From positions 46,562,001 to 46,626,000 of the forward strand of contig NC_079165.1 of the NCBI RefSeq assembly GCF_947568905.1: a stretch of 64,000 nucleotides of DNA. The letters run 5' to 3'. This stretch comes from Ostrea edulis (Eukaryota). Below, piece after piece: positions 15,235 through 46,517 of this stretch; position 1 is the stretch's first letter; each line of letters begins with the position of its first letter. Below the pieces are notes generated by a model. That model saw only the letters and a list, made by a program, of their open reading frames with translations, was not told the origin of the DNA and searched no databases. The translations under genes and the position numbers were made by a program.

Positions 15235-15383
15235 TTATTTGTTTTCTTTGACACTCTTCTGTACGATGTCCAGTACTTTGTCGATACTGCCGTGATTTTC
15301 TCGAAGCAAGCACTGCAACCATCCTCCGTCATTATGAAATCCCATTGACATCATTTGCGTCAAAGATTCGTCAATTCTCGGGT
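15235..15383 (-). CDS. UBA-domain terminal exon of the p62 paralog (absent from the ORF track)
   Basis: Acceptor tttttgctattttAG; translates (D)PRIDESLTQMMSMGFHNDGGWLQCLLRENHGSIDKVLDIVQKSVKENK*, colinear with the p62 UBA (human [23 protein letters not shown]). Confidence 0.93.
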
Positions 15384-16478
15384 CTAAAATAGCAAAAATG
15401 ATCAAATATTGTTGGACGTGCTAGTGCAAACTTACGTATAGATTTGAGGGTGGATTTAATTACCATATAGATATTACTAAAATGTTGTTTGAGCAAATTT
15501 TACAGGCAATAATCTATGATGGGTTGCGGGTGGATTTTATTGAGGTGTTTTGACGATTATTTTATATACAAGGTTCCGCTCAATTTGTGGACTAAACAAC
15601 CAGTTGTTTTATACTTGACAGATATTTTCTACTTGGGGTTTACGTAGTAGTTACCCCATATGATATTGTTGGTTATGTGCAGCTGCACTTGTACCATAGT
15701 TTGACATGTCTTCTTTTGTTAGAAGTGTTGGTTATCTGTACATAACCCACACCTTTCTTCAAACCCCGCCCACAAACTCGAAACAACAACATCACTATCC
15801 ACTGTATGAAGTTCTTCCTGATCAAAATTGCCCATATCAAACATGGATAACTAACTCTTAGTTCGCCAAATAAATATTCGCACTCAATCTCATTTGAAGC
15901 TTAAGACAAGATAATATCGTCAGTAGTTTCGTCCCAAAGACTTCCTATTTCCATATTCTCCTCCATGTGTGCGAACAAGTTGAGAAACACGTGTAAGTAG
16001 AAATACAGGTATTTATAAAGATTTTTCTAAAAGACCCAGTCACGTGATAAGAACGCGTTTGAGAGATATACTTGTTTTGTGGACAGGGTGAACAGCGGCG
16101 GCCAATCAGACTTGTCGTGTTTCTTTTATGGTTCAGCGCCATACAATTCTTAATATTTTTTTCGCTTATGTTTCACCGATTTTTTTTAATTCATTGTATA
16201 TACATGTAAATGTTTTTCAGCCAATTTAGTCAAAATATGTATTACAATGAAGAATATCAAATAGGATTTTTAAAAGAGTAACTACCATCATCAATTAAAT
16301 ATGTTGCTAAATTTTTAAACAGAAAAATGCATAAATATGGGTTCTTTGAATTTTAATTGTATCTAATTTCAATTCTTTAAAGCAAATACGGGTACTAGAA
16401 GTCGTAAAATGAGTAAATGCGAAATAAAAATATCAAAACCAACAATCCTAACATTTATATGCATTTCAAAAAAAGTTT

Positions 16479-16509
<31 letters not shown>

Positions 16510-19500
16510 TAATGATCATACAATTTTTTGTCATAGAAAGTCATTTTAATAGAAATATATGGTGTACAAAGTGCAATGTAAAGACAAAAAAAAAAATAAA
16601 AAAAATAAAAAAAAAAATAGGAATCATATTGTAAACAGGCGACCGCGCTTCCGAAAGCTATAATAAAATATAATGAATAATAGTAAACTATGGTAGAAGT
16701 CACTTACCCCATATAATATTGTTGATTATGTTATTCAGATACCCGATGGGCGTGGTCATAAGGACACTCGGGAGCTACGCTCCCTCGTGTCCTTATGACC
16801 ACGCCCATCGGGTATCTGCACATAACCAACAATATTGTATGGGGTAACTACTACATAATCAACAATATTATATGGGGTAAGTGACTTGTACCATAGTTTA
16901 CTATTATTCGTTATATTTTATTATAGCTTTCGGAAGCGCGGTCGCCTGTTTACAATATGATGCCAATTGTTATGTATTTAAATTACACTTTGTACACCAT
17001 ACATTTCTATCATGATTACTTTCTATCACCGAAAAATGTATGTTCATTAATTGTTTTTAAAAAGCCGTTTTTAAAGTACATATAAATGTTTGGACTGTTG
17101 GTTTTGATATTTTTATTTAACATTTACGCATTCGTCGACTTTTAGTACCGGCATTGGCTTTAAGAATTGAAATTTAAAAATTCAAATAAAATTCTTAGAA
17201 CCCATATTCATGCATTTTTCTGTTTAAAAATTTAGCAATATATTCAACTGATGATGGTGGTTACTCTTTTGAAAATCCTATTTGATATCCTTCATTTTGA
17301 TACATATTTTGACTAAATTGGCTGGAAAAACATTTACATGTATATAAAATAGATTTTTAAAAAAGGTGAAACATAAGAGAGAAAAAATTAAGAATTATAA
17401 GATGCGAAACCATAAAAGAAACACAAGTCTGATTCACTCTGTCCGCTAAACAAGTTTATCTCTCAAACGCATTCTTATCACGTGACTGGGTCTTTTATAA
17501 AACTCTTTATAAATGCTACCCGTATTTCTACGTACACGTGTTTCTCGACTTGAGGAGAATATGGAAATAGAAAGTCGTTGGGACGAAACCATTGACGATA
17601 TTATCTTGTATCAAGGTTTAAGTGAGATTCAGTGCAAATATCTATAATGTATTTGGAGAACTTAGTCTGAGTGAGTTATCCATGTTTGATATGTGCAATT
17701 TTGATCTGGAGGAACTTCATACAGTGGACAGTGATGTTGTTTTATTCTTTCGAGAATGTGGGCGGGGTTTGAAGAAAAGTGTGGGTTATGTACAGATAAC
17801 CCACACTTTTAACAAAAGAAAGCACGCCAAACTATGGTACAATTGTATTTACACAGTCTTGTTTTACACATGCTGCTGCTTATATCAATAGCTGTAACAG
17901 CACAATACACCAGTATCACTAAAACGTCACTGCCATGTTTTCGTAAAATTGTACACACAGTTTCGTATTTTACTCTAGCATAATTTAGCTGATGACTAGC
18001 TGCGGTCACAACTCGTTGTGACGCAAAAATTATAACATTGGTGCTAAGCCTATGTTATTTTATGATTCATTACGTAAATTTGCCCAGAACTATAGTTTTG
18101 TCACCCTTGCCTTGTTCCACGTATGCCAGACATCATCTACTGTAGCTCACATTGTTTACTCATGGAATATAAATGGTTTGATAATGAAGTCTTTACTTAC
18201 AGTGAAAACAAATGTCCATTATAGTCCTGGTTGAATGATCCTTTTTGTATATGTCGAATTACTTGTATATTTTAAGTTGTACAAATGTTTACGATATATT
18301 TTTTTGAACCCGTGTGCTGTACGGCGTCGTAATTTGTTGTGATTGGTTGAACGTGTCCGTACAGTATTTCTATTGGTTAATTCCTATCATGTAACACTTA
18401 CAGAAAGGCTGAGCTAGCCATTATCGGCAGATAATTTGTCAGATGCAGGGCGCCAAAGTTTGAAGTCAACATTTACATGTATAGCTACCTTAGATAAGTA
18501 TACTAAGTGAAGGCAAGTCAAGATAGTGATCTCTAAACACAATGGATACCTGTTAATATTTTGTCAAACATTTTTGCCTATTCTATAGTCTAAATAACGT
18601 TACACAATGTCATAATCCCCACATTGCTGTTCAGTATAGAGATCACCAAAACAATCATATTGTTTTATGAATTATAAGAAGGTTTTGTCTTCTTTTAACA
18701 CCGCCTGTATCAGAGAGTGACCAGAAACTGATTAGCAAGATGTATTACGGTTATACTTTGTACTCCCTATTTAACAAATGGACATCCGCGGGGAGCTTAC
18801 AGTATTGTTTGAAGTATCCTGAACATGGAAATTCCCAAATGACTTATTTCATTGAATTTCGTAATCATTTTCAATTCAAAAAGGAGAAAAACGAGGAAAA
18901 TTTAGATGATTGGAATTCTATTATAGGACATAATGAGTACTTGTAGTTTTAACATTCTTCTTCGGACCGATGAATTGCAAACAGTAGTGCAATGTCAATA
19001 GTAAATCAAAATCACTTTATGTCACTGTAAGATAAATATGGAAAGCATCTGAAGGCATTTCAGAACATTTACTTAATACAGTACTAGTAGAAAACTATTC
19101 AATGAGACGAGGTGGTCAGCTAGGAGAGAAAATATGAATTATCACAGTCAGAGAGGACACTGGCAGCTAGGAGAGAAAATACGACTATCACAGACTGTGA
19201 GAGAGGACACTGTCAGCTAGGAGAGAACATGCGATTATCACAGACTGTCAGAGAGGACACTGTCAGTTAGGAGAGAAAATACGATTATCACCGACTGTCA
19301 GAGAGGACCATGTCAGCTAGGAGAGAAAATACGACTATCACATACTGTCAGAGAGAACAATGTCAGCTAGGAGAGAAAATCCGATTATCAGTCAGAGAGG
19401 ACACTGTCAGCTAGGAGAGAAAATACGATTATCAGAGACTGTCAGAGAAGATCATGACAGCTAGGAGAGAAAATACGACTATCACACACTGTCAGAGAGG

Positions 19501-22500
19501 ACCATGTCAGTTAGGAGAGAAAATACGATTATCAGTCAGAGAGGACACTGTCAGCTAGGAGAGAAAATACGACTATCACACACTGTCAGAGAGGACCATG
19601 TCAGCTAGGAGAGAAAATGCGATTATCACACACTGTCGGAGAGGACCATGTCAGCTAGGAGAGAAAATACGACTATCACAGACTGTCAGAGAGGACACTG
19701 TCAGCTAGGAGAGAAAATACGATTATCAGAGACTGTCAGAGAGGACACTGTCAGCTAGGAGAGAAAATGCGATTATCACACACTGTCAGAGAGGACCATG
19801 TCAGCTAGGAGAGAAAATGCGACTATCACAGACTGTCAGAGAGGACACTGTCAGCTAGGAGAGAAAATACGATTATCAGAGAGTGTCAGAGAGGACACTG
19901 TCAGCTAGGAGAGAAAATGCGATTATCACAGACTGTCGGAGAGGACCATGTCAGCTAGGAGAGAAAATACGACTATCACACACTGTCAGAGAGGACACTG
20001 TCAGTTAGGAGAGAAAATACGATTATCACAGACTTTCAGAGAGGACCATGTCAGCTAGGAGAGAAAATACGATTATCACAGACTGTCAGAGAGGACACTG
20101 TCAGCTAGGAGAGAAAATAGACTATCACACACTGTCAGAGAGGACACTGTCAGCTAGGAGAGAAAATACGACTATCACACACTGTCAGAGAGGACACTGT
20201 CAGCTAGGAGAGAAAATACGACTATCACACACTGTCAGAGAGGACAGTGTCAGCTAGGAGAGAAAACAAGATTATCACACAGTCAGAGAGGACCATGTCA
20301 GTTAGGAGAGAAAATACGACTATCACACACTGTCAGAGAGGACACTGCCAGCTAGGAGAGAAAATACGATTATCACAGACTGTCAGGGAGGACCATATCA
20401 GTTAGGAGAGAAAATACGACTATCACAGACTGTGAGAGAGGACACTGTCAGCTAGGAAAGAACATGCGATTATCACAGACTGTCAGAGAGGACCATGTCA
20501 GCTAGGAGAGAAAAAACGATCATCACAGACTGTCAGAGAGGACCATGTCAGCTAGGAGAGAAAATACGACTATCACAGACTGTCAGAGAGGACACTGTCA
20601 GTTAGGAGAGAAAATACGACTATCACACACTGTCAGAGAGGACACTGCCAGCTAGGAGAGAAAATACGATTATCACAGACTGTCAGGGAGGACCATATCA
20701 GTTAGGAGAGAAAATACGACTATCACAGACTGTGAGAGAGGACACTGTCAGCTAGGAAAGAACATGCGATTATCACAGACTGTCAGAGAGGACCATGTCA
20801 GCTAGGAGAGAAAAAACGATTATCACAGACTGTCATAGAGGACCATGTCAGCTAGGAGAGAAAATACGACTATCACAGACTGTCAGAGAGGACACTGTCA
20901 GTTAGGAGAGGACATACGATTATCACAGTCAGAGAGGACACTGTCAGCTAGGAGAGAACATGCGATTATCACAGACTGTCAGAGAGAAATACTGTCAGCT
21001 AGGAGAGAAAATACGACTATCACACACTGTCAGAGGACAAAGTCAGCTTGGAGAGAAAACAAGATTATCACACAGTCAGACAGGACACTGTCAGTTAGGA
21101 AAAAAAATACGACTATCACATACTGTCAGAGAGGGCACTGTCAGCTAGGAGAGAAAATACGATTATCAGAGACTGTCAGAGAAGATCATGACAGCTAGGA
21201 GAGAAAATACGACTATCACACACTGTCAGAGAGGACCATGTCAGTTAGGAGAGAAAATACGATTATCAGTCAGAGAGGACACTGTCAGCTAGGAGAGAAA
21301 ATACGACTATCACACACTGTCAGAGAGGACCATGTCAGCTAGGAGAGAAAATGCGATTATCACACACTGTCGGAGAGGACCATGTCAGCTAGGAGAGAAA
21401 ATACGACTATCACAGACTGTCAGAGAGGACACTGTCAGCTAGGAGAGAAAATACGATTATCAGAGACTGTCAGAGAGGACACTGTCAGCTAGGAGAGAAA
21501 ATGCGATTATCACACACTGTCAGAGAGGACCATGTCAGCTAGGAGAGAAAATGCGACTATCACAGACTGTCAGAGAGGACACTGTCAGCTAGGAGAGAAA
21601 ATACGATTATCAGAGAGTGTCAGAGAGGACACTGTCAGCTAGGAGAGAAAATGCGATTATCACAGACTGTCGGAGAGGACCATGTCAGCTAGGAGAGAAA
21701 ATACGACTATCACAGACTGTCAGAGAGGACACTGTCAGTTAGGAGAGAAAATACGATTATCACAGACTTTCAGAGAGGACCATGTCAGCTAGGAGAGAAA
21801 ATACGATTATCACAGACTGTCAGAGAGGACACTGTCAGCTAGGAGAGAAAATAGACTATCACACACTGTCAGAGAGGACACTGTCAGCTAGGAGAGAAAA
21901 TACGACTATCCCACACTGTCAGAGAGGACACTGTCAGCTAGGAGAGAAAATACGACTATCACACACTGTCAGAGAGGACAGTGTCAGCTAGGAGAGAAAA
22001 CAAGATTATCACACAGTCAGAGAGGACCATGTCAGTTAGGAGAGAAAATACGACTATCACACACTGTCAGAGAGGACACTGCCAGCTAGGAGAGAAAATA
22101 CGATTATCACAGACTGTCAGGGAGGACCATATCAGTTAGGAGAGAAAATACGACTATCACAGACTGTGAGAGAGGACACTGTCAGCTAGGAAAGAACATG
22201 CGATTATCACAGACTGTCAGAGAGGACCATGTCAGCTAGGAGAGAAAAAACGATTATCACAGACTGTCATAGAGGACCATGTCAGCTAGGAGAGAAAATA
22301 CGACTATCACAGACTGTCAGAGAGGACACTGTCAGTTAGGAGAGGACATACGATTATCACAGTCAGAGAGGACACTGTCAGCTAGGAGAGAACATGCGAT
22401 TATCACAGACTGTCAGAGAGAAATACTGTCAGCTAGGAGAGAAAATACGACTATCACACACTGTCAGAGGACAAAGTCAGCTTGGAGAGAAAACAAGATT

Positions 22501-25500
22501 ATCACACAGTCAGACAGGACACTGTCAGTTAGGAAAAAAAATACGACTATCACATACTGTCAGAGAGGGCACTGTCAGCTAGGAGAGAAAATACGATTAT
22601 CACACACTGTCAGAGAGGACCATGTCAGCTAGGAGAGAAAATGCGACTATCACAGACTGTCAGAGAGGACACTGTCAGCTAGGAGAGAAAATACGACTAT
22701 CACAGACTGTCAGAGAGGACACTGTCAGTTAGGAGAGGACATACGATTATCACAGTCAGAGAGGACACTGTCAGCTAGGAGAGAACATGCGATTATCACA
22801 GACTGTCAGAGAGAAATACTGTCAGCTAGGAGAGAAAATACGACTATCACACACTGTCAGAGGACAAAGTCAGCTTGGAGAGAAAACAAGATTATCACAC
22901 AGTCAGACAGGACACTGTCAGTTAGGAAAAAAAATACGACTATCACATACTGTCAGAGAGGGCACTGTCAGCTAGGAGAGAAAATACGATTATCACACAC
23001 TGTCAGAGAGGACACTGTCAGCTAGGAGAGAAAATACGATTATCAGAGACTGTCAGAGAGGACACTGTCAGCTAGGAGAGAAAATACGACTATCACAGAC
23101 TGTCAGAGAGAACACTGTCAGCTAGGAAAGAACATGCGATTATCACAGACTGTCAGAGAGAAACACTGTCAGCTAGGAGAGAAAATACGACTACCACACA
23201 CTGTCAGAGGACAAAGTCAGCTAGGAGAGAAAACAAGATTATCACGGTCAGAGAGGACACTGTCAGTTAGGAAAGAAAATACGACTATCACATACTGTCA
23301 GAGAGGACATTGTCAGCTAGGAAAGAAAATACGACTATCACACACTGTCAGAGAAGATCATGTCAGCTAGGAGAGAAAATACGACTATCACAGACTGTGA
23401 GAGAGGACACTGTCAGTTAAGAGAGAAAATACGATTATCAGTCAGAGAGGACACTGTCAGCTAGGAGAGAAAATACGATTATCAGAGACTGTCAGAGAGG
23501 ACACTGTCAGCTAGGAGAGAAAATGCGATTATCACACACTGTCGGAGAGGACCATGTCAGCTAGGAGAGAAAATACGACTATCACAGACTGTCAGAGAGG
23601 ACACTGTCAGCTAGGAGAGAAAATACGATTATCAGAGACTGTCAGAGAGGACACTGTCAGCTAGGAGAGAAAATGCGATTATCACACACTGTCAGAGAGG
23701 ACCATGTCAGCTAGGAGAGAAAATGCGACTATCACAGACTGTCAGAGAGGACACTGTCAGCTAGGAGAGAAAATACGATTATCAGAGAGTGTCAGAGAGG
23801 ACACTGTCAGCTAGGAGAGAAAATGCGATTATCACAGACTGTCGGAGAGGACCATGTCAGCTAGGAGAGAAAATACGACTATCACAGACTGTCAGAGAGG
23901 ACACTGTCAGTTAGGAGAGAAAATACGATTATCACAGACTTTCAGAGAGGACCATGTCAGCTAGGAGAGAAAATACGATTATCACAGACTGTCAGAGAGG
24001 ACACTGTCAGCTAGGAGAGAAAATAGACTATCACACACTGTCAGAGAGGACACTGTCAGCTAGGAGAGAAAATACGACTATCCCACACTGTCAGAGAGGA
24101 CACTGTCAGCTAGGAGAGAAAATACGACTATCACACACTGTCAGAGAGGACAGTGTCAGCTAGGAGAGAAAACAAGATTATCACACAGTCAGAGAGGACC
24201 ATGTCAGTTAGGAGAGAAAATACGACTATCACACACTGTCAGAGAGGACACTGCCAGCTAGGAGAGAAAATACGATTATCACAGACTGTCAGGGAGGACC
24301 ATATCAGTTAGGAGAGAAAATACGACTATCACAGACTGTGAGAGAGGACACTGTCAGCTAGGAAAGAACATGCGATTATCACAGACTGTCAGAGAGGACC
24401 ATGTCAGCTAGGAGAGAAAAAACGATTATCACAGACTGTCAGAGAGGACCATGTCAGCTAGGAGAGAAAATACGACTATCACAGACTGTCAGAGAGGACA
24501 CTGTCAGTTAGGAGAGGACATACGATTATCACAGTCAGAGAGGACACTGTCAGCTAGGAGAGAACATGCGATTATCACAGACTGTCAGAGAGAAATACTG
24601 TCAGCTAGGAGAGAAAATACGACTATCACACACTGTCAGAGGACAAAGTCAGCTTGGAGAGAAAACAAGATTATCACACAGTCAGACAGGACACTGTCAG
24701 TTAGGAAAAAAAATACGACTATCACATACTGTCAGAGAGGGCACTGTCAGCTAGGAGAGAAAATACGATTATCACACACTGTCAGAGAGGACACTGTCAG
24801 CTAGGAGAGAAAATACGATTATCAGAGACTGTCAGAGAGGACCATGTCAGCTAGGAGAGAAAATACGACTATCACAGACTGTCAGAGAGAACACTGTCAG
24901 CTAGGAAAGAACATGCGATTATCACAGACTGTCAGAGAGAAACACTGTCAGCTAGGAGAGAAAATACGACTACCACACACTGTCAGAGGACAAAGTCAGC
25001 TAGGAGAGAAAACAAGATTATCACGGTCAGAGAGGACACTGTCAGTTAGGAAAGAAAATACGACTATCACATACTGTCAGAGAGGACATTGTCAGCTAGG
25101 AAAGAAAATACGACTATCACACACTGTCAGAGAAGATCATGTCAGCTAGGAGAGAAAATACGACTATCACAGACTGTGAGAGAGGACACTGTCAGTTAAG
25201 AGAGAAAATACGATTATCAGTCAGAGAGGACACTGTCAGCTAGGAGAGAAAATACGATTATCAGAGACTGTCAGAGAGGACACTGTCAGCTAGGAGAGAA
25301 AATGCGATTATCACACACTGTCGGAGAGGACCATGTCAGCTAGGAGAGAAAATACGATTATCACAGACTGTCAGAGAGGACACTGTCAGCTAGGAGAGAA
25401 AATAGACTATCACACACTGTCAGAGAGGACACTGTCAGCTAGGAGAGAAAATACGACTATCCCACACTGTCAGAGAGGACACTGTCAGCTAGGAGAGAAA

Positions 25501-28500
25501 ATACGATTATCAGAGAGTGTCAGAGAGGACACTGTCAGCTAGGAGAGAAAATGCGATTATCACACACTGTCAGAGAGGACCATGTCAGCTAGGAGAGAAA
25601 ATGCGACTATCACAGACTGTCAGAGAGGACACTGTCAGCTAGGAGAGAAAATACGATTATCAGAGACTGTCAGAGAGGACACTGTCAGCTAGGAGAGAAA
25701 AAACGATTATCACAGACTGTCAGAGAGGACCATGTCAGCTAGGAGAGAAAATACGACTATCACAGACTGTCAGAGAGGACACTGTCAGCTAGGAGAGAAA
25801 ATACGATTATCAGAGACTGTCAGAGAGGACACTGTCAGCTAGGAGAGAAAATGCGATTATCACACACTGTCAGAGAGGACCATGTCAGCTAGGAGAGAAA
25901 ATGCGACTATCACAGACTGTCAGAGAGGACACTGTCAGCTAGGAGAGAAAATACGATTATCAGAGACTGTCAGAGAGGACACTGTCAGCTAGGAGAGAAA
26001 AAACGATTATCACAGACTGTCAGAGAGGACCATGTCAGCTAGGAGAGAAAATACGACTATCACAGACTGTCAGAGAGGACACTGTCAGCTAGGAGAGAAA
26101 ATACGATTATCAGAGACTGTCAGAGAGGACACTGTCAGCTAGGAGAGAAAATACGACTATCACACACTGTCAGAGAGGATAACACGATCGATGTGTACTT
26201 AATCCTTCTAGAGATTCTGTATCTCTATGAAAGTTATGTCTGCTCATTTTAGAAATCAATGATATTGTCTGTTGATTTTCTATTTGACCCATATGTTATT
26301 GTATACGTGTCAATGCGTTCCTACCATTCCATGGTTTGAGTGAACTAAACTGAACTGAACTAATGTACCTGCATAATTTGTATCTATAAAGGAATCTCCA
26401 GTTATGGTTAGAAAATCCCCTGTCATGCCCTTCCAGTAATTCAGTTGTGAGGAATTCTCACATATACATGTAGGAATGTTTATACAATATTTACATCTCC
26501 AATGCGTTTGCCTTTGATGAATTGTAAAGATAACCATTTCCTCATGAACGTACTGCATATGAACATAGATAAATATAGTACGTCAATGTTAAAAGGGTTC
26601 GCACCTGAGTTTTTTAGTACTGCCAATTTTTGGGGAAGTGTTTTTAATTTCTACGTTGAAGGAGAATAGGGATTTGAACTTAAAAATTATTCAAGATCTA
26701 TGCATTTGATCTTGATATTCCTGTTAGTGTCAATACAACATAAACAATACAGTCCAATCATTACATAAAATAGATATATAATCCAGGGTTGTTGGTTGTT
26801 TTGTTTTGTTTTTTTGTTGTTTTTTTTTGTTGTTTTTTTTTTACAAAATTTCGATTATATTAATTTATACTTTTTAAGAATAGGCGTTCTGTTTGAAAAC
26901 TCTTTTTTCAAACAAATTCACGAATCACAACATCTGAATCAGTTCCAAATCTCAACTACCTTGTATCATAAATTATAAAATTGAAATACACGTATAGGGG
27001 TATGAAAATTTAGGATTTATTGGATAAAGCAGAAACTGTAATAACATGCAGATTTAAAACATTTTGATTAAACAATCCTTCCACCACAAAATGTAGTCCT
27101 GCCAAACCCTTTCAAAATTGAAATTGATACAAAGGATTTCAACTGGATAGGGTTAAGAAATAGATGCATGTATAATATGCTTGGATCAATGGGATGTGCT
27201 CAAAAGCTGGGGAGCTTAGAACTTCCTCAAGAATTCGACAGAAATGGAAGTAGTGTAAATATAAGAAATAATTTTCACTTCTGAAAATACGAAAATGTGC
27301 CTATTTTTCTATTAGGCCCTATAATGAATGAACCATATCTCCTTAAAGAATTTCATAATGTGAAGATACTAGAAAGAAAACGCAGGCCCTCATTTAGGGA
27401 ATTCTTTATATAGAAGAATATCATAATAGAACGTATCATGGAGGTGTGTTTTACTGCATCCTATTTTCCTCTCTTTGATTTGCTAAACGCCGGAATAAAA
27501 ATCACTATTATTGTTATATCAAGTAAGCATTCTTAATGTATTATAAATATGTTCGCTGTGGTCGTGTTAATTATTCATTTTCGCAGAATTGAGGACAAAT
27601 ATGTGATCCGGTATATTATATTACTTTACCAAGTCCACTTGGTGGATCCTCTACTTGAAAACCCCGAGAGTTTTCAGCAGTAAGAGGGCTGTTTGCCTGG
27701 TAGCTCTTGCTTTCTGTCCTCTCTTCCGGATTTGATTCGGCCCTGGTCTGCGGGATTTCGTCCTCTACAAAGGTCCAGTGTCCGTCATTTTTGGACGAGT
27801 CTGTTCCCGCTGCCGGACCATCGACATCTTCGTCCGATTTCTCATTCCTTTCTGGAACACTTTCTTTTGAATCCTCGTTTTCTGTTTGTGTAGTGGGTTC
27901 CCTTTCGTCTGTTGCTTTGGTGTATTCAGGCTTTGAGAAGCAATGTTTCGGCTCGGCTAAGTTTCCTTCCACCCCAAAAAATAAATTAAAGTGCAGGTAC
28001 TTAGTACTGGTATATGATACTAACAATGAAGACTTTCCTAACGAACTCCGAGGGGAAGACACAATAAAATATCTTGTTCTTATGATATCATTTACAAAAA
28101 GAATCTGGAGAAAGTCAACACTTCCTTATTCTTGATGATGAGATAATTTCACAGCTCCCTCAATATAAAGTTACGTCTGCATAAACTATATACATGTACA
28201 GTAGTACTATCAATAGTTACCCAATATTCTTATCGAGTCTTTCCCGAGATCTAGCAACTGGTTGCTTCTTTCACTTCTAATATCCTCCCCTTCCTCAACA
28301 AAATACACTCTCAGGTGTTGAAAAATGTGTTGAAATAGGTTGCTGCTCTATTTAAAAAGACCATGCATGGACAGCGATATATAAAAATGCCAACACAAAT
28401 ATCTTCGGTTGATTTCCCTTTGGAGATGTTTTAGCAAATGGAAATTTGGTGAACAGTTGATTTTAAGATAGAATATTAAATAAATATATTTACTGTATGT

Positions 28501-31500
28501 TGTCACACTAACTGTCGGTATTTACTGTATGGGATCACACTAACTGTCGGTATTTACTGTATGTGATCACACTAACTGTCGGTATTTACTGTATGTTGTC
28601 ACACTAACTGTCGGTATTTACTGTATGTGATCACACTAACTGTCGGTATTTACTGTATGTGATCACACTAACTGTCGGTATTTACTGTATGTTGTCACAC
28701 TAACTGTCGGTATTTACTGTATGGGATCACACTAACTGTCGGTATTTACTGTATGGGATCACACTAACTGTCGGTATTTACTGTATGGGATCACACTAAC
28801 TGTCGGTATTTACTGTATGGGATCACACTAACTGTCGGTATTTACTGTATGGGATCACACTAACTGTCGGTATTTACTGTATGGGATCACACTAACTGTC
28901 GGTATTTACTGTATGGGATCACACTAACTGTCGGTATTTACTGTATGGGATCACACTAACTGTCGGTATTTACTGTATGGGATCACACTAACTGTCGGTA
29001 TTTACTGTATGGGATCACACTAACTGTCGGTATTTACTGTATGTAGAGTAAGTACCTCTGGAAACCCCGAAGACGAATATGTCATCGACTTGCTATGGCA
29101 ACCACCACACGTGCCTGGTACTGTTCCCTGTTCCTTTTGTCGTCTTGTACCTTATTCACAGAAGAGTTAGTTAGGTAAAACATGCTCGATCGTTTTGACA
29201 TTTGACGATTGACTCTATCATTTACAGTGCTTTTGAAACATCCGTTGACCTTGGCTTTTCAGTTGACCTAGTAAGAAGTATCTATCTTACAAATTACCAA
29301 CAGATAGACAGACCCTCAATCTTTGGAGCACCTTAAATTCACATTTTATCAACTGAGATAGTATTTTTATGTTTGCGTCAAAAGAGCATTTTTGTTTTCA
29401 AGTGAAGCGAAATGTATTCAATGTATTATGCTTTAAATAGTTTATGTTTACGCTGAGGGGTTTCTTCAATAAGAATATTTTCCAACACTTCCTCAATGTG
29501 ACCATCTTTCTCTTGCAAAAGACGGAGGAGCCATCCGCCTTCGTTGTGGAAACCCATTGACATCATCTGTTGTAAGGCTTCTTCAATTTCATTGCCTGAA
29601 ATACAAAAATTTAAGAAAATAATATATTTCAGACAACATTTCGAGACCGAGGAGATTACCCTGCATCATCCACGAAAACAAAAACTTCATTTCTATCCTA
29701 CTTCGGCTCAGAAATATAAAGTCGTTTACCTATACAGTTACGAATTAGTCACCGTGATGTCATTGCAGTTATGGTTGTAGGTTGGTTGAATATTACTCAA
29801 GAATTTTTCACTCACATATGGAGACGTCACCATTGCTGGTGAAGAGCTGCAAAATTTAGAGCTATGCTCGGCGCTTACGGCCTTTCAGCAGGGCGGGATC
29901 TTTATCGTGCCACACCTGCTGTGATACGGGGTCCGGTTTTTGCGGTCTCATTCGAAGGACCGCCCCATTTAGTCGCCTCTTACGACATGGAAGTGAACAG
30001 TAGGATAGCTCACAATTTACATACTTTTCATGTATCATGTTTGTTTGCAGATGCTCTACCGTTTTCAATAAAGTGATGCTTGTTTTAAATGTGAAAAAGC
30101 ATGTGTATCATGGAATGATGACATTTCAACTAAGGGAATATTTTTCATAATGTGATCAATATTTGAAAATTTACGTGTGGTAGTATGGATGATCCTCAGT
30201 ACACCCCTCTGTAAATTTTCAAAATGGGATAGAAAATTGCCGATTTCTGATTTTACTTTTATCCATGCGCTCTAAACATAATATAATGATTTCTTCCAAA
30301 AATACATGTAAATGCTTTCTAACTAAACGAGAAAGTCATTTTATCAGCATTCTTTTGTGAGTTATTCTATGCAAAAATGGAAATACGCAATGAAGGTATT
30401 CATCCAATAACTTGTAACGACACTTGTAGATTTCGAGAAGGATTCTGGGAAGAAACGTTGTTCCCGTGCTCTTACAGGAAAATATCTTAATCATTCAGGA
30501 ATATAGTATGTTGTTGTGAATCATACCATCATTGGGGTGACCGTTGCAATGGTGGAGGCATATTGCCCTCAATTTAAAAAGAGGAATTTATGTTGTTGCA
30601 GTGAAAGCAAACTCCGAAAACTTCATCAAGTTTGAGCATCTCGAAGTTTCTATTAACAACAACGACAATAATGTTTTTTCTAAGAACAAAATTAACGTTC
30701 TAACTTCTTACATGGATCAGAAATAAATGTTTCACTGGTTTCGCATTCGGTCACTGTGTTTTCTTCCAGTTGGTTCTCGGGTTTTGTGTTCTGCTCGCTC
30801 TTAGCATTACTCTGGTCGACACGCTCTACTTCTTTGTCGATGTCAATTGATTCTTTGTTATTTTCGGTGCTCTCGTTGGTGACGTCAACATTTTCAAATC
30901 GATCAGCGCTTTCGGAAACCCTTTGATCAGCATTTCCTGTGAATGTTAAAAATGTTTTTAACATGTTTAATAGAAATGCCATTGAAATTGCACTGTAATT
31001 GGTACCGGTAGTCGTCTTCACCTTGGCCAGTCATGTAATCTGGGAATAGTTTTACGCCGATGGTAATATATTGCACAAATTCTTCTGTTCCAACTTCTGG
31101 AATTTTTGTTGCACATGCCTTAAGTTTTGGCTTGAGAAATGGTGTACGTGTGTGCACTGGAAAAAATATCAATTTATAGAATACCAGTCGGGGTATGATT
31201 TTTCTCCAAAAGAATGTTTGAACTCTGAACTTTACAGTGTGAATATCTTGGAATTACCTCTAGCGTATATTTTCAAGCAACCGTCTACCGCATTCTTCGT
31301 AAACTCCGACATTTCTTCGTTCGAAGAAAAGGACACAAAGTCACCGTCATCATCTAGGATATAAAGCAAAAAGACGGATTTCTTTTATCTGAAATATGCT
31401 CAAAGTTTCTATCTCTATTAACAATATGTATAAACAATTAAATGCTTTCTTTGTTGTTTTATTGGTGATGAAGGTACATGTAGCTAAAATTGCACAAACA

Positions 31501-40500: not shown

Positions 40501-43110
40501 AATTTTATGCTGATCATGTTGTAAACCAATCGCAATTTCTCAGCTTGCCGGAAAGGCCCGAGAACGTGCGATTGGTTGTAGACCTAAGCGTCAATGATGT
40601 TGCCTCATTCTGGGCGCTTCGTTCTGGAAATTTCCATAAAGCGGATTCAAGACTAAAACTACCAATTGAAGAAACGAACAGGCATATCTTATCTATTCAA
40701 CAATTATCAAAACTTATTTCCTATGTAAGATCAAAATCAAGCATCGATAAACAACGGATTTACTTCAGATCGTATTATCTTAAGTTGTCATTAGAAGAAA
40801 AAAAGAAAAATGGCTTAGATCCTCCAAAGTGTGTCCGCTACTTACTCTCATGTTTGCTATTTCGGGGTAGTTTATCGAAAACGAAAGTAGATTTTTAATT
40901 AATTTTACGACATTAACTTATCATGCACGATTCTATTATAGTTTACGGACCTCACCTCACATTTGAAACAATATTAAAGGTGCAAGAAGTAACTCTGGAG
41001 CAAGCTTTTCGAAGTTCATTGGCAAAATTTGTTAATTTATAAGTATAGATATATGTATCGGGGTATCCAGTGTAAATCTTTGATCCCTTATTGTGGCCCA
41101 CCCTACCCTGGGGAACCATGGTTTAAACAAACTTGAATCTACTCTATGTCAAGGAAGCTTCCATATATATTTTAACTTTTCTGGCGCAGTGGTTCTTGAC
41201 CACGTTCTATTTTTCGTTTTTCATGGTTATCTCCCCTTTGAAAAAAAAACCAACTTCTCTTTACCCAAGAATTTGTGCCAAGTTTGATTGAAAATGGCTC
41301 AGTGATTCTTGATAATCTTTAAAAAAAAGATGCCACAAAATGTTTACTATTGAATTCTTAATTATCTTCACTTCAAAAAGGGCGTGCCACTTCCCTTCCA
41401 AATGATGAGATTCTTCAAAGTCATGCTTCAGTTTTAAACACATTAATATCCCAGTCAATGTGACGAATGGTTACGAGATACGTACTAGATTGGATTTCTA
41501 AACTTCACAAAAACCCTACATAGTTACTAGTACGTTGCTGGATCCAGTAAATGTTCTACCAAGCGTATCTCTTATTCCTTACGAAGATATCAACTGCTGT
41601 GAAGGAGAAACTTCAAATGTATTGTGCTACAACATATGCCAGAAATGTGGATTCTAAAAAATTCTAAAGAACTTCAGTAAATTTGAAATCACAAAACATT
41701 TCTCAAATCTACAACATAAAAACATATGACTTTTTCAACACTTGACACGGCCGTTTTGCGTGATGAATTAATCAAAGATTATTAGATTTTTTGACACTAT
41801 AGACAGTTGTTTCTTCAATGAAAAAGGAAATACTCATAAATATTTATATTCAGTGATCAGTCATTCAAAAGGTTACTTTATTAAACACTACTCTGATTCT
41901 ACGCACAAGTACCCTGAAGCATCCTCTCAAGATGACCCTGAAGTTGATAAAAGAAAGTACTGGAGTTCCCCATCGACAATATCTTTGTAATCTTTGGTGA
42001 TCAGGTCTTCCAACAGTCTGTTGAAATTCCCATAGACACGAATTGTGCTCCTTTATTAGCTGAGCTGTTTTTATATTTTTACAAGGCAGAATTTATTCAA
42101 AAGCTTCTACGTGAATAGAAAAAAACCTCTTGCTGTAGCCTTCACCTAGACATTTGAAAAAAATTGACGATGTTTTATCTATTTACAATAATCATTTTAC
42201 ATTCATGTCGATTCGATATATCCCAGTGAACTCGAAATAAAGACAACACAGAGACTTCCACATCTATTTCATACTTAGATATTTTATTGAACACAGATGT
42301 TAACGCCAAGCTAACAACCCAACTTTGTTGCAAACGAGATGACTTCAGCTTCTCCATCGTTAATTTCTCATATCTATCCAGCAATATTTCATTATTATCT
42401 GCATATGGTGCTTATATCGCTTAACTGATTCGATACGTAAGAGCTTTTTCTGCGTATGAGTTTTTAAATCGAGGCAGGCTACTGACAAATAAGTTGATGT
42501 TACAAGGGTTTCAACGGTCTCGTTTAAAGTCAGCATTTAGCAGATTCTTTTGTGTAATACAACCTGTCATTGGGTCAAATTCTGTCTGACGTGTTTCATA
42601 CCAAATGTTAGGCCGTCCTTTGCATACTACTTTTGACTACAGATTACTCCGTTTACCTGATCAAGATATAGGGCTACTTCGCTAACCGAGGATTTTCGGT
42701 CCACTTCGCTTCTCATAAACAATGACACAACGGGGAATCTCTACATATAGTCGACTTCATAGCCACTTTTATAATCAAACAAGACAATTCTTCCGAATAT
42801 GTACAATGTTTAGTGGTCTAGATGTAAAAAAAGAAAAGACAACTCGTTACGTCTTGGAGAGAGAAAGAGCTAGGTTAATTTCCTATACCCACAAGTTCAG
42901 ATTCTGAATTTTGTTAGTTTCGATATATTAGATGAAATATTTACCTTGCCACTGAAGACTAAAGGTTTTGTTTTGGAGTTCAGGGAACACGGCTTTTATC
43001 CTTTCGTATAGTTGATTGAAGGTAGTCGTTGATGGGTACGAAAATCGTCGTATTTCTGATATTTCCCTCCCACCCCTCATCAAATGAACCTTAACCGTCC
43101 TATCTGCCAT
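15235..43110 (-). CDS. Divergent SQSTM1/p62 paralog (PB1 - ZZ remnant - LIR - UBA), 8 coding exons, ~442-445 aa
   Basis: Exons (minus strand): 42945-43110 (MADRTVKVHL...EIRRF...LQWQ), 31258-31353 (DDDGDFVSFSSNEE, OPCA motif), 31022-31156, 30712-30936, 29056-29150 (CGGC), 28221-28347, 27630 to ~27965/27974 (LIR DGHWTFVEDE; acceptor uncertain), 15235-15383 (UBA). Phases 1,1,1,1,0,1,1 join into one open frame. With the two extra 1-1 exons removed they match SQSTM1 phases 1,1,0,1,1. Middle exons are less certain than PB1/LIR/UBA. Confidence 0.82.
15689..17842. repeat. ~2.15-kb foldback: two ~1-kb inverted arms around a central hairpin
   Basis: 15689-16731 is the diverged reverse complement of 16853-17842 (e.g. 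GACCCAGTCACGTGATAAGAA / TTCTTATCACGTGACTGGGTC). Each arm has ACCATAGTTT...AAACTATGGT inverted motifs near its ends. Central hairpin at 16736-16818. Confidence 0.9.
19115..26179. repeat. 50-bp satellite array, ~141 units, with higher-order repeats
   Basis: Consensus TGTCAGCTAGGAGAGAAAATACGACTATCACAGACTGTCAGAGAGGACAC; variant blocks recur at 1434, 393 and 2172 bp offsets; lies in the last intron of the p62 paralog. Confidence 0.98.
27630..27974 (-). CDS. Acidic/LIR exon of the p62 paralog
   Basis: ...DEDVDGPAAGTDSSKNDGHWTFVEDEIP...DPPSGL with a phase-1 GTAAAG donor; parallels SQSTM1 exon 5 ([10 protein letters not shown]...[12 protein letters not shown]...IYPPT, phase-1 donor). The 5' boundary is uncertain. 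Confidence 0.8.
28487..29043. repeat. 32-bp minisatellite, ~17 copies
   Basis: Unit TTTACTGTATGGGATCACACTAACTGTCGGTA; in intron 5 of the p62 paralog; period is not a multiple of 3 and translation is interrupted by stops. Confidence 0.97.
29805..29990 (+). repeat. Interspersed repeat family B copy (SINE-like; class not established)
   Basis: Matches 9420-9575. Confidence 0.6.
31649..32157. mobile_element. MITE with 16-bp TIR ATGGACACGATTTGAG (Kolobok-like, inferred)
   Basis: TIR at 31649-31664 and its reverse complement at 32142-32157; a partial end also occurs at ~45985 (GGGCATGGACACGATTTGAA). Confidence 0.7.
33412..33767 (+). mobile_element. MITE family A copy
   Basis: CAGGGACGGATCCAGGAATTGCGG ... 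CCCCTTAAATCCGCC; internal sequence shared with the other copies. Confidence 0.78.
33825..33900. repeat. 76-bp near-perfect palindrome/hairpin
   Basis: CATCGTCGGATACCCACGGCTGATCTCGTCTTCTAC-TC-GTAGAAGACGAGATCAGCCGTGGGTA(TA)TCCGACGATG; 36-bp stem with one 2-nt bulge. Confidence 0.92.
34538..34785. mobile_element. 248-bp TA-ended MITE with long (~80 bp) imperfect TIRs
   Basis: TAGCGGCTAGCATAGGGGGCTAGGTATGGCGGCTGATTTGTG... versus ...CACAAATCAGCCACCATACCTAGCCCCTAAGCTAGCCGCTA; partial copy at ~34940-34970. Confidence 0.75.
35575..36585. mobile_element. Kolobok-like non-autonomous DNA transposon, 1011 bp
   Basis: Perfect 21-bp TIR AGAGACACTACAGCTCATTTT; TTAA target duplication at 35571-74 and 36586-89; purine-purine termini fit Kolobok rather than piggyBac. 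A small GGCAGATTTAG...TAGATCCGCC MITE is nested at ~36025-36180. Confidence 0.8.
36590..37019 (-). mobile_element. MITE family A copy
   Basis: Colinear with 12608-13046; ends CCTGGATCCGCCCC. Confidence 0.78.
37293..38800. repeat. Tandem triplication of a ~532-553 bp unit
   Basis: CTAAATAAAGTATTGT restarts at 37293, 37846 and 38378; copies 1 and 2 are nearly identical, copy 3 diverges after ~38480. Confidence 0.9.
39761..39863. repeat. 103-bp hairpin with perfect 42-bp stem
   Basis: AAGTTATACGAGTATAACCTGGTTTGGGTCAGTTTACGCTTT, 18-nt loop containing CGC-TTC-GCG, then the exact reverse complement. Confidence 0.93.
41030..41430 (+). repeat. Degenerate Cg170-like satellite/Helitron-associated monomers
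   Basis: AACAAACTTGAATC...CCCAAGAATTTGTGCCAAGTTTGATTGAAAATGGCTCAGTG resembles the bivalve ~166-bp repeat as I recall it; a related inverted piece lies at ~54720-54900. Confidence 0.5.
41470..42680 (+). mobile_element. Penelope-like retroelement reverse transcriptase remnant (pseudogenised)
   Basis: Broken frames give TAVKEKLQMYCATTYAR, MWILKNSKE, KTYDF/STL, IDNIFVIFGDQVFQQSVEIPIDTNCAPLLAELFLY, IDDVLSI, IYPSELEIK, KRDDFSFSIVNF, LIRYVRA and RLKSAF, motifs typical of PLE RT; many stops and frameshifts. Confidence 0.85.
42945..43110 (-). CDS. First coding exon (PB1 N-half) of the p62 paralog
   Basis: MADRTVKVHLMRGGREISEIRRFSYPSTTTFNQLYERIKAVFPELQNKTFSLQWQ with a phase-1 donor, colinear with SQSTM1 exon 1. 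Confidence 0.92.
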
Positions 43111-43310
43111 TTAGTTAACACTTACGGTGTTTCAAGTATTCAAAGAAATGTTTCCCTATATTGGTATATACATGTACATGTATATACTGTGATAATTGAA
43201 ATTGTGTGATTATTTTCCTCGTACATGACGCTTTATTGTATGAATTTTCAATATAAATAGCTGATAAAGGAAGAGCACAGGGAAACTCACTGCACGAAAT
43301 CGCTGCTAAA

Positions 43311-43682
43311 ATATATACATGTAAGAGAATTCTAAAATATATACATGTAAGAGAATTCATTTATATATACATGTAAGAGAATTCATTTATATATACATGT
43401 AAGAGAATTAATTTATATATACATGTAAGAGAATTCATTTATATATACATGTAAGAGAATTCATTTATATATACATGTAAGAGAATTCATTTATATATAC
43501 ATGTAAGAGAATTCATTTATATATACATGTAAGAGAATTCATTTATATATACATTGTACATGTAAGAGAATTCATTTATATATACATGTAAGAGAATTCA
43601 TTTATATATACATGTAAGAGAATTCATTTATATATACATGTAAGAGAATTCATTTATATATACATGTAAGAGAATTCATTTA
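43311..43682. repeat. 26-bp minisatellite, ~14 copies
   Basis: Unit ATATATACATGTAAGAGAATTCATTT; 200-570 bp upstream of the paralog ATG. Confidence 0.95.
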
Positions 43683-44044
43683 CGGGGGTTGCAATCTTCC
43701 ATTTGAAAACTTGTCTATTTGGAGTCTGCAATCCACTTTTTAGGGGGCGGAATAGGTATCATCTTTGGTTGCATCCCTTTTGAAAATTTCTCGATCCACC
43801 CTTGGATTTCTTGGTATGGTAATCTACTGAACCGCAACAGAACATGTGCACTCGACATTAGGACTCACACTTCCTTTGATCTACCCCCCCCCCCCCCCTT
43901 GTTCAATGTGCAAAAACTAATAATAGATATTTCCTGAAATGTTCTCGATTATGTGCCCATCAATCCTTAATGCCATTTTGCGCTTTATCAAACTTGTTAA
44001 AGGACACATCGCATGTTTCTAACCTTTTCGATTTTTTTTCAGTT

Positions 44045-44580
44045 TTACTGGAAAAAATATGAAAAGTAAAGATAACGAATAGTGAACAATCTCATAAATC
44101 CCATAAAGAATGCAAAATTAAGAGTAGGACAAACATGGACCCCTGGACACATCAGAGGTGGGATAAGTTGCATAGGAGGAATAAGCATCCCCTGTTGACC
44201 GGCAACACCCACCGTTAGCCCCTTATCCCGACCTTGCAAAAGGAGCAATCTGCAGCCAAATCAACATGCATGGTCCGACAATTGGTACGAAACATGCCAG
44301 GCAGCATCCAACCCAACGACGGGTTGTATTTGCAAATAGCATCAATCCAACCATAGAATTTGCGAAATGCTGACTTCAAACGAGACCGTCGAAATCTTTA
44401 ACATCACCTATTTGTCAGTAGTTTGTTCTGATTTAAAAATTGTTAATTCGCAGAACATGCTCAGATGAGAGATATAAACACCATGATTATGTAGGAGATA
44501 ATGGAATATTGCTACATAAAAATGGGAAGTTGATGAAGGAGAAACTGAAGTCATCCTGCTTTTCTGCCATCACTTGTCAG
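44045..44580 (-). mobile_element. Penelope-like 3' fragment with terminal repeat
   Basis: Reverse strand encodes RRSRLKSAFRKFYG-like RT C-terminus, followed by the GGGGATGCTTATTCCTCC...GGGGTCCATGTTTGTCC terminal repeat shared with 62200-62530. Confidence 0.75.
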
Positions 44581-46048: not shown

Positions 46049-46109
<61 letters not shown>

Positions 46110-46479
46110 AAACATTGTTACTACTGTTACTATAATATGTATACATGCATCTGTGCATATGCATGTATACATATGTATATCTGTGCATTATATGTATTTG
46201 TGTCATATCTAAACTGAGCCACTATTCAGAGGGTCCTGTTCTCTAATAGAGCTGCCCAATGAGTCGGATATGTGTGGCACACCCGTAGCCAGGGGTGGGG
46301 GGGGGGGGGGGTGGGGGTGGGGTTCGTGGGGTTCGTACGAACCCCCCCTTGAAAACTACTAAGCACTATTAAAGTCGGCATTTTGTTTGAATTGTGACTA
46401 TTAAAGTCGGGATTTTTTATGAAAATCATGAAAATTCATAGTAAAAAAGGCATGATTCCAAAATTCAAATTAAGTGCCA

Positions 46480-46517
<38 letters not shown>

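What the first reader, a model, noticed from the sequence alone, without database searches (positions are those of the whole stretch)
15235..43110. Hidden second p62/SQSTM1 gene: a 28-kb, ZZ-less paralog head-to-head with canonical p62
Seen: eight small exons scattered among satellites and TEs join in frame into a ~442-445 aa protein with PB1, LIR (WTFV) and UBA. Shared intron phases mirror the canonical SQSTM1, whose ATG is 4.5 kb from the paralog ATG on the opposite strand. The UBA exon (15235-15383) and most middle exons are absent from the ORF track, so automated annotation could split or miss the gene. Known: p62/Ref(2)P is usually single-copy in bilaterians, with NBR1 as a distant relative. 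Inference: an old inverted duplication produced a two-receptor selective-autophagy module with divided functions.
Basis: partly seen in the sequence, partly recalled or inferred. Interest (0 to 1): 0.88.

Follow-up and report, generated by a model that had tools for sequence, protein, structure and literature searches.

The report
Oyster p62 paralog with two UBAs
The flat oyster really has a second, expressed copy of the autophagy receptor p62 lying head-to-head with the normal one, but it is already in the public annotation.

Summary
The gene is real. The window is Ostrea edulis. RNA contigs from two studies give GT..AG joints that join seven middle exons on the minus strand. That ORF is identical to RefSeq XP_056010197.1 (LOC130051715 isoform X1), so the gene is not hidden. 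An 8-exon, 445-aa form is RefSeq isoform X2.

The architecture is PB1, helix, acidic linker, UBA1, collapsed ZZ, LIR (WTFV), UBA2. Orthologs with the same layout occur in Saccostrea (two species), Crassostrea virginica and C. gigas. In C. virginica and S. cucullata the gene is also head-to-head with canonical p62. The inverted duplication therefore predates the split of these oyster genera.

The paralog evolves about 3.7 times faster than canonical p62. Its four modules are conserved at 48-85% identity against 9-30% in linkers, and the LIR block has dN/dS 0.09.

It is most likely a ubiquitin-binding autophagy co-receptor; this function is inferred, not tested. No paper in the searched library describes it. 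Another note of this scan (s1-274688, untested) reports other p62-like PB1 genes elsewhere in this genome.

The parts
42945..43110 (-). Paralog exon 1: ATG at 43110, N-terminal half of PB1 (K7, R21, R22 basic cluster). Phase out 1.
   Evidence: Pfam PB1 19.5 bits on the exon alone, 43.4 bits in the whole protein. Donor is GT. Identical to RefSeq isoform X1. The X2 RNA contig runs 244 nt beyond exon 2.
31258..31353 (-). Exon 2: C-terminal half of PB1 with the acidic OPCA motif DDDGDFVSFSSNEE.
   Evidence: RNA contigs of X1-X4 cover it, and the joint 31156/31258 is seen in four runs. Pfam PB1 profile positions 49-79.
31022..31156 (-). Exon 3 (45 aa). Cassette exon, present in all RNA contigs seen and skipped in RefSeq isoform X2. 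Predicted helix at residues 111-129. Contains EEFVQYITIGVKLFPD, which weakly resembles the canonical '[16 protein letters not shown]' motif.
   Evidence: Joints 30935/31021 and 31156/31258 in X1-X4. P0004 lacks exactly these residues. AF2 helix with pLDDT about 67-70. hhalign best local hit E 0.019.
30712..30936 (-). Exon 4: acidic, disordered linker (75 aa).
   Evidence: RNA joints. pLDDT below 50. 12-26% identity between genera.
29452..29595 (-). Exon 5: internal p62-type UBA domain (UBA1, residues about 208-252), spliced 8 codons before an in-frame stop.
   Evidence: Joints 29594/30711 and 29147/29449 in X1 and X2. Pfam UBA_5 42.6 bits. Best PDB match is the human sequestosome-1 UBA, 2rru, E 3e-8. 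AF2 three-helix bundle with pLDDT about 90. 60-71% identity across oysters.
29056..29150 (-). Exon 6: remnant of the ZZ exon. Same phases as the canonical ZZ exon (in 1, out 0). Only one CxxC (CGGC) is left.
   Evidence: RNA joints. Phases. No Pfam ZZ hit in P0035, while canonical P0090 scores 47.8 bits. Orthologs keep more Cys and S. echinata gives a sub-threshold ZZ hit. Disordered in AF2.
28221..28347 (-). Exon 7: middle exon, phases 0 to 1 as in canonical exon 4.
   Evidence: RNA joints 27964/28220 and 28347/29056. Phases.
27630..27965 (-). Exon 8: disordered region carrying the conserved block DVDGPAAGTDSSKNDGHWTFVED (LIR core WTFV).
   Evidence: RNA contigs cover 27636-27964. The LIR block is 48-85% identical across oysters. 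dN/dS is 0.09 for the block and 0.33 for the exon against a related oyster contig, L003.
15235..15383 (-). Exon 9: C-terminal UBA (UBA2) and stop codon.
   Evidence: Pfam UBA_5 41.9 bits. Acceptor AG with matching phase. RNA run X2 holds 0.27 and X1 0.13 of the words of 14850-15420. Contiguous with exon 8 in RefSeq X1 and in all orthologs.
47666..52282 (+). Canonical p62/SQSTM1, six exons: 47666-47834, 47956-48054, 49178-49440 (ZZ), 50991-51192, 51394-51789 (LIR WTIL), 52116-52282 (UBA). 431 aa.
   Evidence: Model built is identical to RefSeq XP_056010202.1. Pfam PB1, ZZ and UBA_5 all above threshold.
43111..47665 (.). Divergent intergenic region between the two ATGs (4.5 kb; about 1.1 kb in C. 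virginica and about 1.9 kb in S. cucullata). The only block conserved among genera is 47353-47648, next to the canonical ATG.
   Evidence: A 26-bp x 14 tandem repeat lies at 43311-43682.

Best explanation
Shown:
- LOC130051715 of Ostrea edulis is an expressed paralog of p62/SQSTM1 that is conserved across oyster genera and evolves fast.
- It arose by an inverted local duplication before Ostrea, Saccostrea and Crassostrea diverged.
- Its layout is: type-AB PB1, a short helix, an acidic linker, an internal p62-type UBA (UBA1), a collapsed ZZ, a disordered region with a conserved LIR (WTFV), and a C-terminal UBA (UBA2).
- All four modules are under purifying selection.
- In O. edulis the ZZ has shrunk to a single CxxC and is predicted disordered.

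Inferred:
- It acts as a ubiquitin-binding selective-autophagy receptor or co-receptor.
- The PB1, which keeps both the basic K7/R21/R22 face and the acidic OPCA face, lets it polymerise with itself and probably with canonical p62.
- The LIR tethers it to Atg8/LC3.
- Two UBAs give it bivalent or differently regulated ubiquitin binding.
- Loss of ZZ removes N-degron/RIP-type inputs.
- The exon order and phases suggest a gene made of one and a half p62 units: [PB1, mid-like exon, acidic exon, UBA] followed by [ZZ, mid, LIR exon, UBA].
For: Transcript and model:
- Spliced RNA contigs with GT..AG joints link exons 2-8 in X1/X2 and exons 2-4 in X3/X4, a second study whose contigs are 100% identical to the window.
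- The nine-exon ORF is open for 490 aa and identical to RefSeq X1.

Domains:
- Pfam gives UBA_5 as two stretches (79.6 bits) and PB1 at 43.4 bits, with no ZZ.
- The best PDB matches of PB1 and UBA1 are human sequestosome-1.
- AF2 predicts PB1, UBA1 and UBA2 at pLDDT about 90 and the rest disordered.

Orthologs and synteny:
- Orthologs with the same layout occur in S. cucullata, S. echinata, C. virginica, C. gigas and a further transcript set.
- The same head-to-head pair followed by an HLH gene is found in C. virginica and S. cucullata.
- The exon structure is conserved in C. virginica.

Evolution:
- The paralog clade has 100/100 support on a long stem. The Ostrea-Saccostrea path is 0.85 against 0.23 for the canonical gene.
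- Domain identities are 48-85% against 9-30% for linkers.
- dN/dS is 0.33 for exon 8 and 0.09 for the LIR block.
- K7, R21, D56 and D60 are invariant, and R22 nearly so, across 29 p62 sequences.
- Phases of exons 6-9 equal those of canonical exons 3-6.
- The exon 3 motif is the best local profile hit to the canonical mid-exon motif (E 0.019).
Against: - No binding, localisation or knock-down data exist, so function is inferred from domains only.
- I did not see reads spanning exon 1->2 or exon 8->9 in O. edulis.
- Between the window and the about 3% diverged RNA source (organism A), the listed exon differences are 13 non-synonymous to 3 synonymous. That is roughly neutral, though the counts are small and the list is incomplete.
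- The ZZ is decaying, which could mean relaxed constraint on part of the protein.
- The one-and-a-half-unit origin rests on phases and one weak motif match. The tree position of the paralog and of the two UBAs is unresolved.
Confidence: 0.72

Rival explanations
1. The paralog is a modulator of canonical p62 rather than a cargo receptor. It enters or caps p62 PB1 filaments or condensates. Its two UBAs, for example through an intramolecular UBA-UBA pairing like the p62 UBA dimer, tune how those assemblies engage ubiquitin.
For: - The PB1 keeps both interaction faces.
- The genes share a divergent intergenic region in three genera, which would permit co-regulation.
- ZZ is lost.
- The dimer-forming GGW/MGF region of both UBAs is conserved.
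Against: - The LIR block is the most strongly constrained part of exon 8 (dN/dS 0.09), as expected for a protein that itself docks on Atg8.
- No conserved promoter block lies next to the paralog ATG.
- Nothing has been tested experimentally.
Confidence: 0.15
2. It is a fast-evolving, immunity-specialised autophagy receptor, comparable to Drosophila ref(2)P in virus resistance, shaped by an arms race with oyster pathogens.
For: - It evolves about 3.7 times faster than the canonical gene.
- There is an excess of non-synonymous differences between close taxa, 13 to 3.
- The gene was retained across oyster genera.
Against: - The fast sites lie mostly in disordered linkers.
- The deeper comparison gives dN/dS well below 1.
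- I examined no expression or infection data.
Confidence: 0.08
3. It is a decaying duplicate on its way to becoming a pseudogene. Transcription and the open frame are residual.
For: - The ZZ is collapsed in O. edulis.
- The gene is bloated to 28 kb by satellites and repeats.
- The shallow comparison looks near-neutral.
Against: - Intact ORFs of 490-553 aa exist in six species or transcript sets that diverged long ago.
- Domains are conserved far above linkers.
- dN/dS is 0.09-0.33.
- All sixteen splice sites are canonical.
- Spliced transcripts appear in two studies, and many C. gigas transcript contigs exist.
Confidence: 0.03
4. There are two separate genes on the minus strand: PB1...UBA1 (43110-29429) and ZZ-remnant...LIR...UBA2 (29150-15235).
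For: Exon 5 looks like a terminal UBA exon, with an in-frame stop 8 codons past its donor. The layout looks like two units.
Against: - Single RNA contigs in X1 and X2 splice exon 5 to exon 6 (joint 29147/29449).
- RefSeq and all orthologous proteins, including transcript-derived ORFs, are continuous through this point.
Confidence: 0.02

Closest known systems
Canonical p62/SQSTM1 (Ref(2)P), here the neighbouring gene at 47666-52282 (XP_056010202.1)
   Same: N-terminal type-AB PB1, a LIR with a WxxL/V core in an acidic disordered region, a C-terminal UBA_5 domain, the same intron phases, and adjacent genomic position.
   Different: - No functional ZZ in O. edulis.
- An additional internal UBA plus two extra exons between PB1 and the ZZ remnant.
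- About 3.7 times faster evolution.
- Only 28% overall identity to the canonical protein.
Plant NBR1 / tobacco Joka2 (PB1-ZZ-FW-UBA1-LIR-UBA2)
   Same: A PB1-containing autophagy receptor with two UBA domains and the LIR lying between them. In Arabidopsis only the C-terminal UBA binds ubiquitin (PMC3547818, read).
   Different: - The oyster protein has no FW/NBR1 domain.
- Its UBAs are p62-type (PF16577).
- Its UBA1 lies upstream of the ZZ vestige.
- It arose independently inside oysters. The similarity is convergent architecture, not orthology.
Metazoan NBR1
   Same: PB1, LIR and a C-terminal UBA in a selective autophagy receptor.
   Different: No FW domain and no coiled coils were detected. 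The best PDB and Pfam matches are to sequestosome-1, not NBR1.

Membership tests
p62/SQSTM1 (sequestosome-1) family | N-terminal PB1 domain of type AB (basic K7/R21/R22 plus acidic OPCA DxDGD...EE) | tested here: met
   Pfam PB1 43.4 bits against a cut-off of 23.6. Aligns to human p62 PB1 4uf9, E 1.8e-8. K7, R21, D56 and D60 are invariant and R22 nearly invariant in 29 sequences.
p62/SQSTM1 (sequestosome-1) family | ZZ-type zinc finger after PB1 | tested here: not met
   No ZZ hit in P0035, while the canonical neighbour scores 47.8 bits. Only one CxxC remains, and the region is disordered in AF2. Orthologs keep a vestige, with S. echinata at 12.3 bits, below threshold. Exon phases show it is the ZZ exon's descendant.
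p62/SQSTM1 (sequestosome-1) family | LIR motif (acidic stretch followed by W/F/Y-x-x-L/I/V) that binds Atg8/LC3 | tested here: inconclusive
   The motif DSSKNDGHWTFVED is present, conserved in all orthologs and under strong constraint (dN/dS 0.09). Binding itself cannot be tested with these tools.
p62/SQSTM1 (sequestosome-1) family | C-terminal p62-type UBA (PF16577) with the MGF loop | tested here: met
   Exon 9 scores UBA_5 41.9 bits. AF2 gives a three-helix bundle with pLDDT 92-97. The MGF/GGW motifs are conserved.
p62/SQSTM1 (sequestosome-1) family | Descent from the p62 gene (shared gene structure and synteny) | tested here: met
   Matching intron phases. Head-to-head adjacency to canonical p62 in three genera. 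However, the tree position relative to bivalve p62 is unresolved; the AU test does not reject an oyster-specific origin, p 0.23.
NBR1 family | FW (NBR1) domain between ZZ and LIR | tested here: not met
   No such Pfam hit at E up to 5 in P0035 or its orthologs.
Double-UBA autophagy receptors (plant NBR1 type) | Two UBA domains flanking the LIR | tested here: met
   UBA_5 appears as two stretches, with the LIR at residues 393-396 between UBA1 (208-252) and UBA2 (442-487). This is architectural similarity only, with no common origin.

The most novel reading that the evidence does not exclude
The oyster paralog is a 'one-and-a-half p62'. It was made by fusing or internally duplicating p62 units, so that a LIR is sandwiched between two conserved p62-type UBAs. 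This converges on the plant NBR1 layout. The internal UBA is not redundant: it acts as a regulatory partner of the C-terminal UBA, through intramolecular pairing or bivalent chain reading. That would give oysters a second, ZZ-independent and fast-evolving ubiquitin-autophagy channel, possibly used in stress or pathogen responses.
Probability: 0.25. Interest if true: 0.55.

Novelty: new variant of a known kind. Interest (0 to 1): 0.36.

Why it matters
p62 is treated as a single-copy hub in invertebrate autophagy studies. The C. gigas autophagy inventory lists one SQSTM1 (PMC7595595). Oysters in fact carry a second conserved p62-derived gene with two UBAs and a decaying ZZ.

This matters in three ways:
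- Interpreting p62 antibodies, qPCR and knock-downs in oysters, because both genes share UBA epitopes and sequence.
- Studying how PB1/UBA receptors diversify.
- As a natural experiment on what a p62 without ZZ but with an extra UBA can do.

It does not change annotation, because the gene models already exist.

Tried and rejected
- Exhaustive phmmer search with exon 8 found only two representatives: one genomic ORF fragment and the S. cucullata ortholog. It was useful as an entry point but gave no hits outside oysters.
- Two word-based searches, with P0002 and with a five-sequence profile, found no ZZ-less PB1+UBA relatives outside Ostreidae. Sensitivity is limited, so absence in other bivalves is not shown.
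- The full-length tree could not place the paralog clade. It sits in a polytomy on a long stem, and AU tests do not reject either an oyster-specific or a pteriomorph-level origin.
- The UBA-only tree (46 columns) groups UBA1 with oyster canonical UBAs at 93/90 and leaves UBA2 apart. A UBA1+UBA2 clade is not rejected (p 0.21), so the source of the internal UBA is unresolved.
- Profile-profile comparison of exons 3-4 with canonical middle exons gave only a weak 16-column motif match (E 0.019). Exon 4 against exon 8 gave nothing convincing.
- The shallow syn/non-syn count from contig differences (3 to 13) is too small and incomplete to use as a selection test. It was replaced by the L003 comparison.
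- Rfam and tRNA scans found nothing inside the gene.
- The hypothesis of two separate genes was rejected by the exon 5-exon 6 joint.
- I could not check isoform X2/X3 usage or the two long-intron junctions with reads, because read laying allows one call of at most 6 kb.


Full report
**What is in the window.** The + strand carries a canonical p62/SQSTM1 gene of six exons (47666-52282). I assembled it from splice sites and homology. The result is identical to RefSeq XP_056010202.1, 'sequestosome-1-like [Ostrea edulis]', 431 aa, with PB1, ZZ and UBA_5 all above Pfam thresholds. The window is therefore Ostrea edulis.

A tblastn search with this protein against the window gave hits on the minus strand. 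It found one PB1 exon pair (43098-42946 and near 31353). Unexpectedly, it also found two UBA exons, at 29.5 kb and at 15.3 kb.

**RNA evidence.** The run index gave four RNA runs:
- X1 and X2, from organism A, whose exons differ from the window by about 3%.
- X3 and X4, from a second study labelled 'mollusc metagenome', whose contigs match the window exactly.

Laying their contigs on 26700-32400 gave single contigs: 2,474 nt in X2, 1,233 nt in X1 and 308 nt in X3/X4. All six joints read CT..AC on the + strand, which is GT..AG on the minus strand. They define these exons:
- 31353-31258
- 31156-31022
- 30936-30712
- 29595-29452
- 29150-29056
- 28347-28221
- 27965 down to about 27636

The X2 contig continues 244 nt upstream of exon 2. 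That fits exon 1 (166 nt) plus a short 5'UTR. RNA runs X2 and X1 also hold 0.27 and 0.13 of the sampled words of 14850-15420, the last exon plus 3'UTR. Given about 3% divergence, that is the same yield as for the middle exons.

**The gene model.** This gives nine exons, all with canonical GT/AG sites, and an open frame of 490 aa. The product is letter-for-letter RefSeq XP_056010197.1, 'uncharacterized protein LOC130051715 isoform X1'.
- Isoform X2 (445 aa, named sequestosome-1-like) lacks exactly exon 3.
- Isoform X3 (441 aa) uses another first exon (ATG at 40517) and so lacks half of the PB1.

It is not hidden from automated annotation, and the form seen in all four RNA runs has nine exons rather than eight.

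I did not see reads across the two long introns (11.6 and 12.2 kb). Those junctions rest on the identical RefSeq model, on orthologous full-length proteins and on contig lengths.

**Architecture.**
- Pfam finds PB1 (43.4 bits) and two separate UBA_5 stretches (79.6 bits together; 42.6 bits for exon 5 alone and 41.9 bits for exon 9 alone). It finds no ZZ.
- The closest solved structures for both the PB1 and the internal UBA are human sequestosome-1.
- An AlphaFold2 model on a 29-sequence alignment predicts PB1 (residues 1-90), UBA1 (207-250) and UBA2 (443-489) with pLDDT about 90. It also predicts a helix in exon 3 (111-129, pLDDT about 67-70). Everything else, including the ZZ remnant, is disordered.
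- The PB1 keeps K7, R21/R22 and the DxDGD...EE acidic motif.
- The LIR is DSSKNDGHWTFVED.

The order is PB1, helix, acidic linker, UBA1, ZZ remnant (a single CGGC), middle exon, LIR, UBA2.

**Relatives and age.** An exhaustive search with exon 8 found a 522-aa protein of Saccostrea cucullata. Searches seeded with it and with a family alignment found orthologs in:
- S. echinata (529 aa)
- C. virginica (497 aa, LOC111127452)
- C. gigas (553 aa, LOC105345618, with many transcript-derived copies)
- a further transcript set (527 aa)

All have PB1, UBA1, a Cys-rich ZZ vestige, the LIR and UBA2. The score gap to canonical p62 proteins is large, at least 656 bits against at most 170 bits.

In C. virginica and S. 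cucullata the paralog is again head-to-head with canonical p62 and followed by the same HLH gene. The window shows the same neighbour: a bHLH exon at 5284-5733 on the minus strand. The C. virginica gene has the same exon layout. The inverted duplication therefore predates the divergence of these oyster genera.

In a maximum-likelihood tree the paralogs form a 100/100 clade on a long stem whose position is unresolved. An origin next to the oyster canonical genes is not rejected (p-AU 0.23). No ZZ-less relative was found outside oysters, but the word-based searches cannot prove absence.

**Selection.** The paralog evolves about 3.7 times faster than its neighbour: the Ostrea-Saccostrea path is 0.85 against 0.23. 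Conservation is strongly modular across genera:

| Region | Identity |
|---|---|
| PB1 | 49-63% |
| UBA1 | 60-71% |
| LIR block | 48-85% |
| UBA2 | 60-78% |
| Linkers and ZZ remnant | 9-30% |

A metagenome contig from a related oyster (L003) aligns to the window only over exon 8, at 79% nucleotide identity. Against it, exon 8 has dS 0.53, dN 0.18 and dN/dS 0.33. The LIR block has dN/dS 0.09.

The listed differences between the window and the organism A transcripts are 13 non-synonymous to 3 synonymous, and 11 of the 13 lie in exons with no domain or motif. That would look neutral, but the counts are small and the list is incomplete. No indels were reported in exons.

**Origin of the extra UBA (inference).**
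- Exons 6-9 have the phases of canonical exons 3-6 (1 to 0, 0 to 1, 1 to 1, 1 to end).
- Exons 3-5 are three inserted phase-1 exons ending in a UBA exon. That exon's frame would stop 8 codons beyond the present donor.
- Exon 3 carries EEFVQYITIGVKLFPD. This is the best local profile match to the canonical middle-exon motif [16 protein letters not shown], but only weakly (E 0.019).

This fits a gene built from one and a half p62 units, by fusion of tandem copies or by internal duplication. It is not proven. The UBA tree is too short to decide.

**Likely function (inference).** The protein has a polymerising PB1, a constrained LIR and two p62-type UBAs. The most economical reading is a ubiquitin-binding autophagy receptor or co-receptor that can co-assemble with canonical p62 and works without ZZ inputs.

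The closest architectural analogue is plant NBR1. It also has two UBAs flanking its LIR, and only the C-terminal one binds ubiquitin (PMC3547818). Alternative readings are scored separately: a modulator of p62 assemblies, an immunity-specialised fast evolver, and a decaying copy.

**Literature.** No paper in the searchable library names these loci. The C. gigas autophagy inventory lists a single SQSTM1 (PMC7595595). Searches for oyster SQSTM1 paralogs gave nothing relevant.

**Verdict.** This is a real, correctly located gene whose existence is already recorded in RefSeq. The new element is the conserved double-UBA, ZZ-decaying architecture and its oyster-wide head-to-head synteny, neither of which appears to have been described. 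Interest is moderate.

Noticed in passing
window 1633-1698 (-), with 5284-5733 (-) and 5868-6515 (-): A mir-33 precursor (Rfam 59.5 bits) lies on the same strand as a bHLH exon ([31 protein letters not shown]-like) and a Q-rich exon. This is the HLH gene that also follows the p62 paralog in C. virginica and S. cucullata. miR-33 inside an SREBP-type host gene appears to be conserved in the oyster.
   Followed up: partly
window 19115-26179: A 7-kb satellite (50-bp unit, about 143 copies, 87% matches) fills much of the 12.2-kb last intron of the paralog. It explains the GC- and AT-skewed block at 19-26 kb.
   Followed up: partly
window 28487-29043 and 43311-43682: A 32-bp x 17 tandem repeat lies inside intron 6. 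A 26-bp x 14 tandem repeat starts about 200 bp upstream of the paralog's ATG.
   Followed up: no
window 29756-30137: A dispersed repeat in intron 4 has enormous summed contig depth in RNA runs X1/X2 (about 43,000 and 26,000) and many variant copies. One weaker copy lies at 9502-9576. There is no Rfam or tRNA match. It is probably an abundant SINE/MITE-like oyster element.
   Followed up: partly
window 47353-47648: The only block of the divergent intergenic region conserved with C. virginica and S. cucullata (72-77% over 200-300 nt) lies directly upstream of the canonical p62 ATG. It is probably that gene's 5'UTR or core promoter. Nothing comparable lies next to the paralog's ATG.
   Followed up: partly
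window about 40517 (-): An alternative first coding exon (MISIKL...) is used by RefSeq isoform X3. It would give a protein lacking the N-terminal half of the PB1. I did not check it with reads.
   Followed up: no
window 11341-12071 (+): ORFs resembling a mariner/Tc1-type transposase fragment lie between the paralog's 3' end and the HLH gene.
   Followed up: no
   Followed up: partly
same genome, another piece (note s1-274688): Another first-stage note reports a head-to-head pair of p62-like PB1 genes with Arg/Cys-rich tails elsewhere in this genome. If real, oysters have more p62-derived PB1 genes than the two in this window.
   Followed up: no
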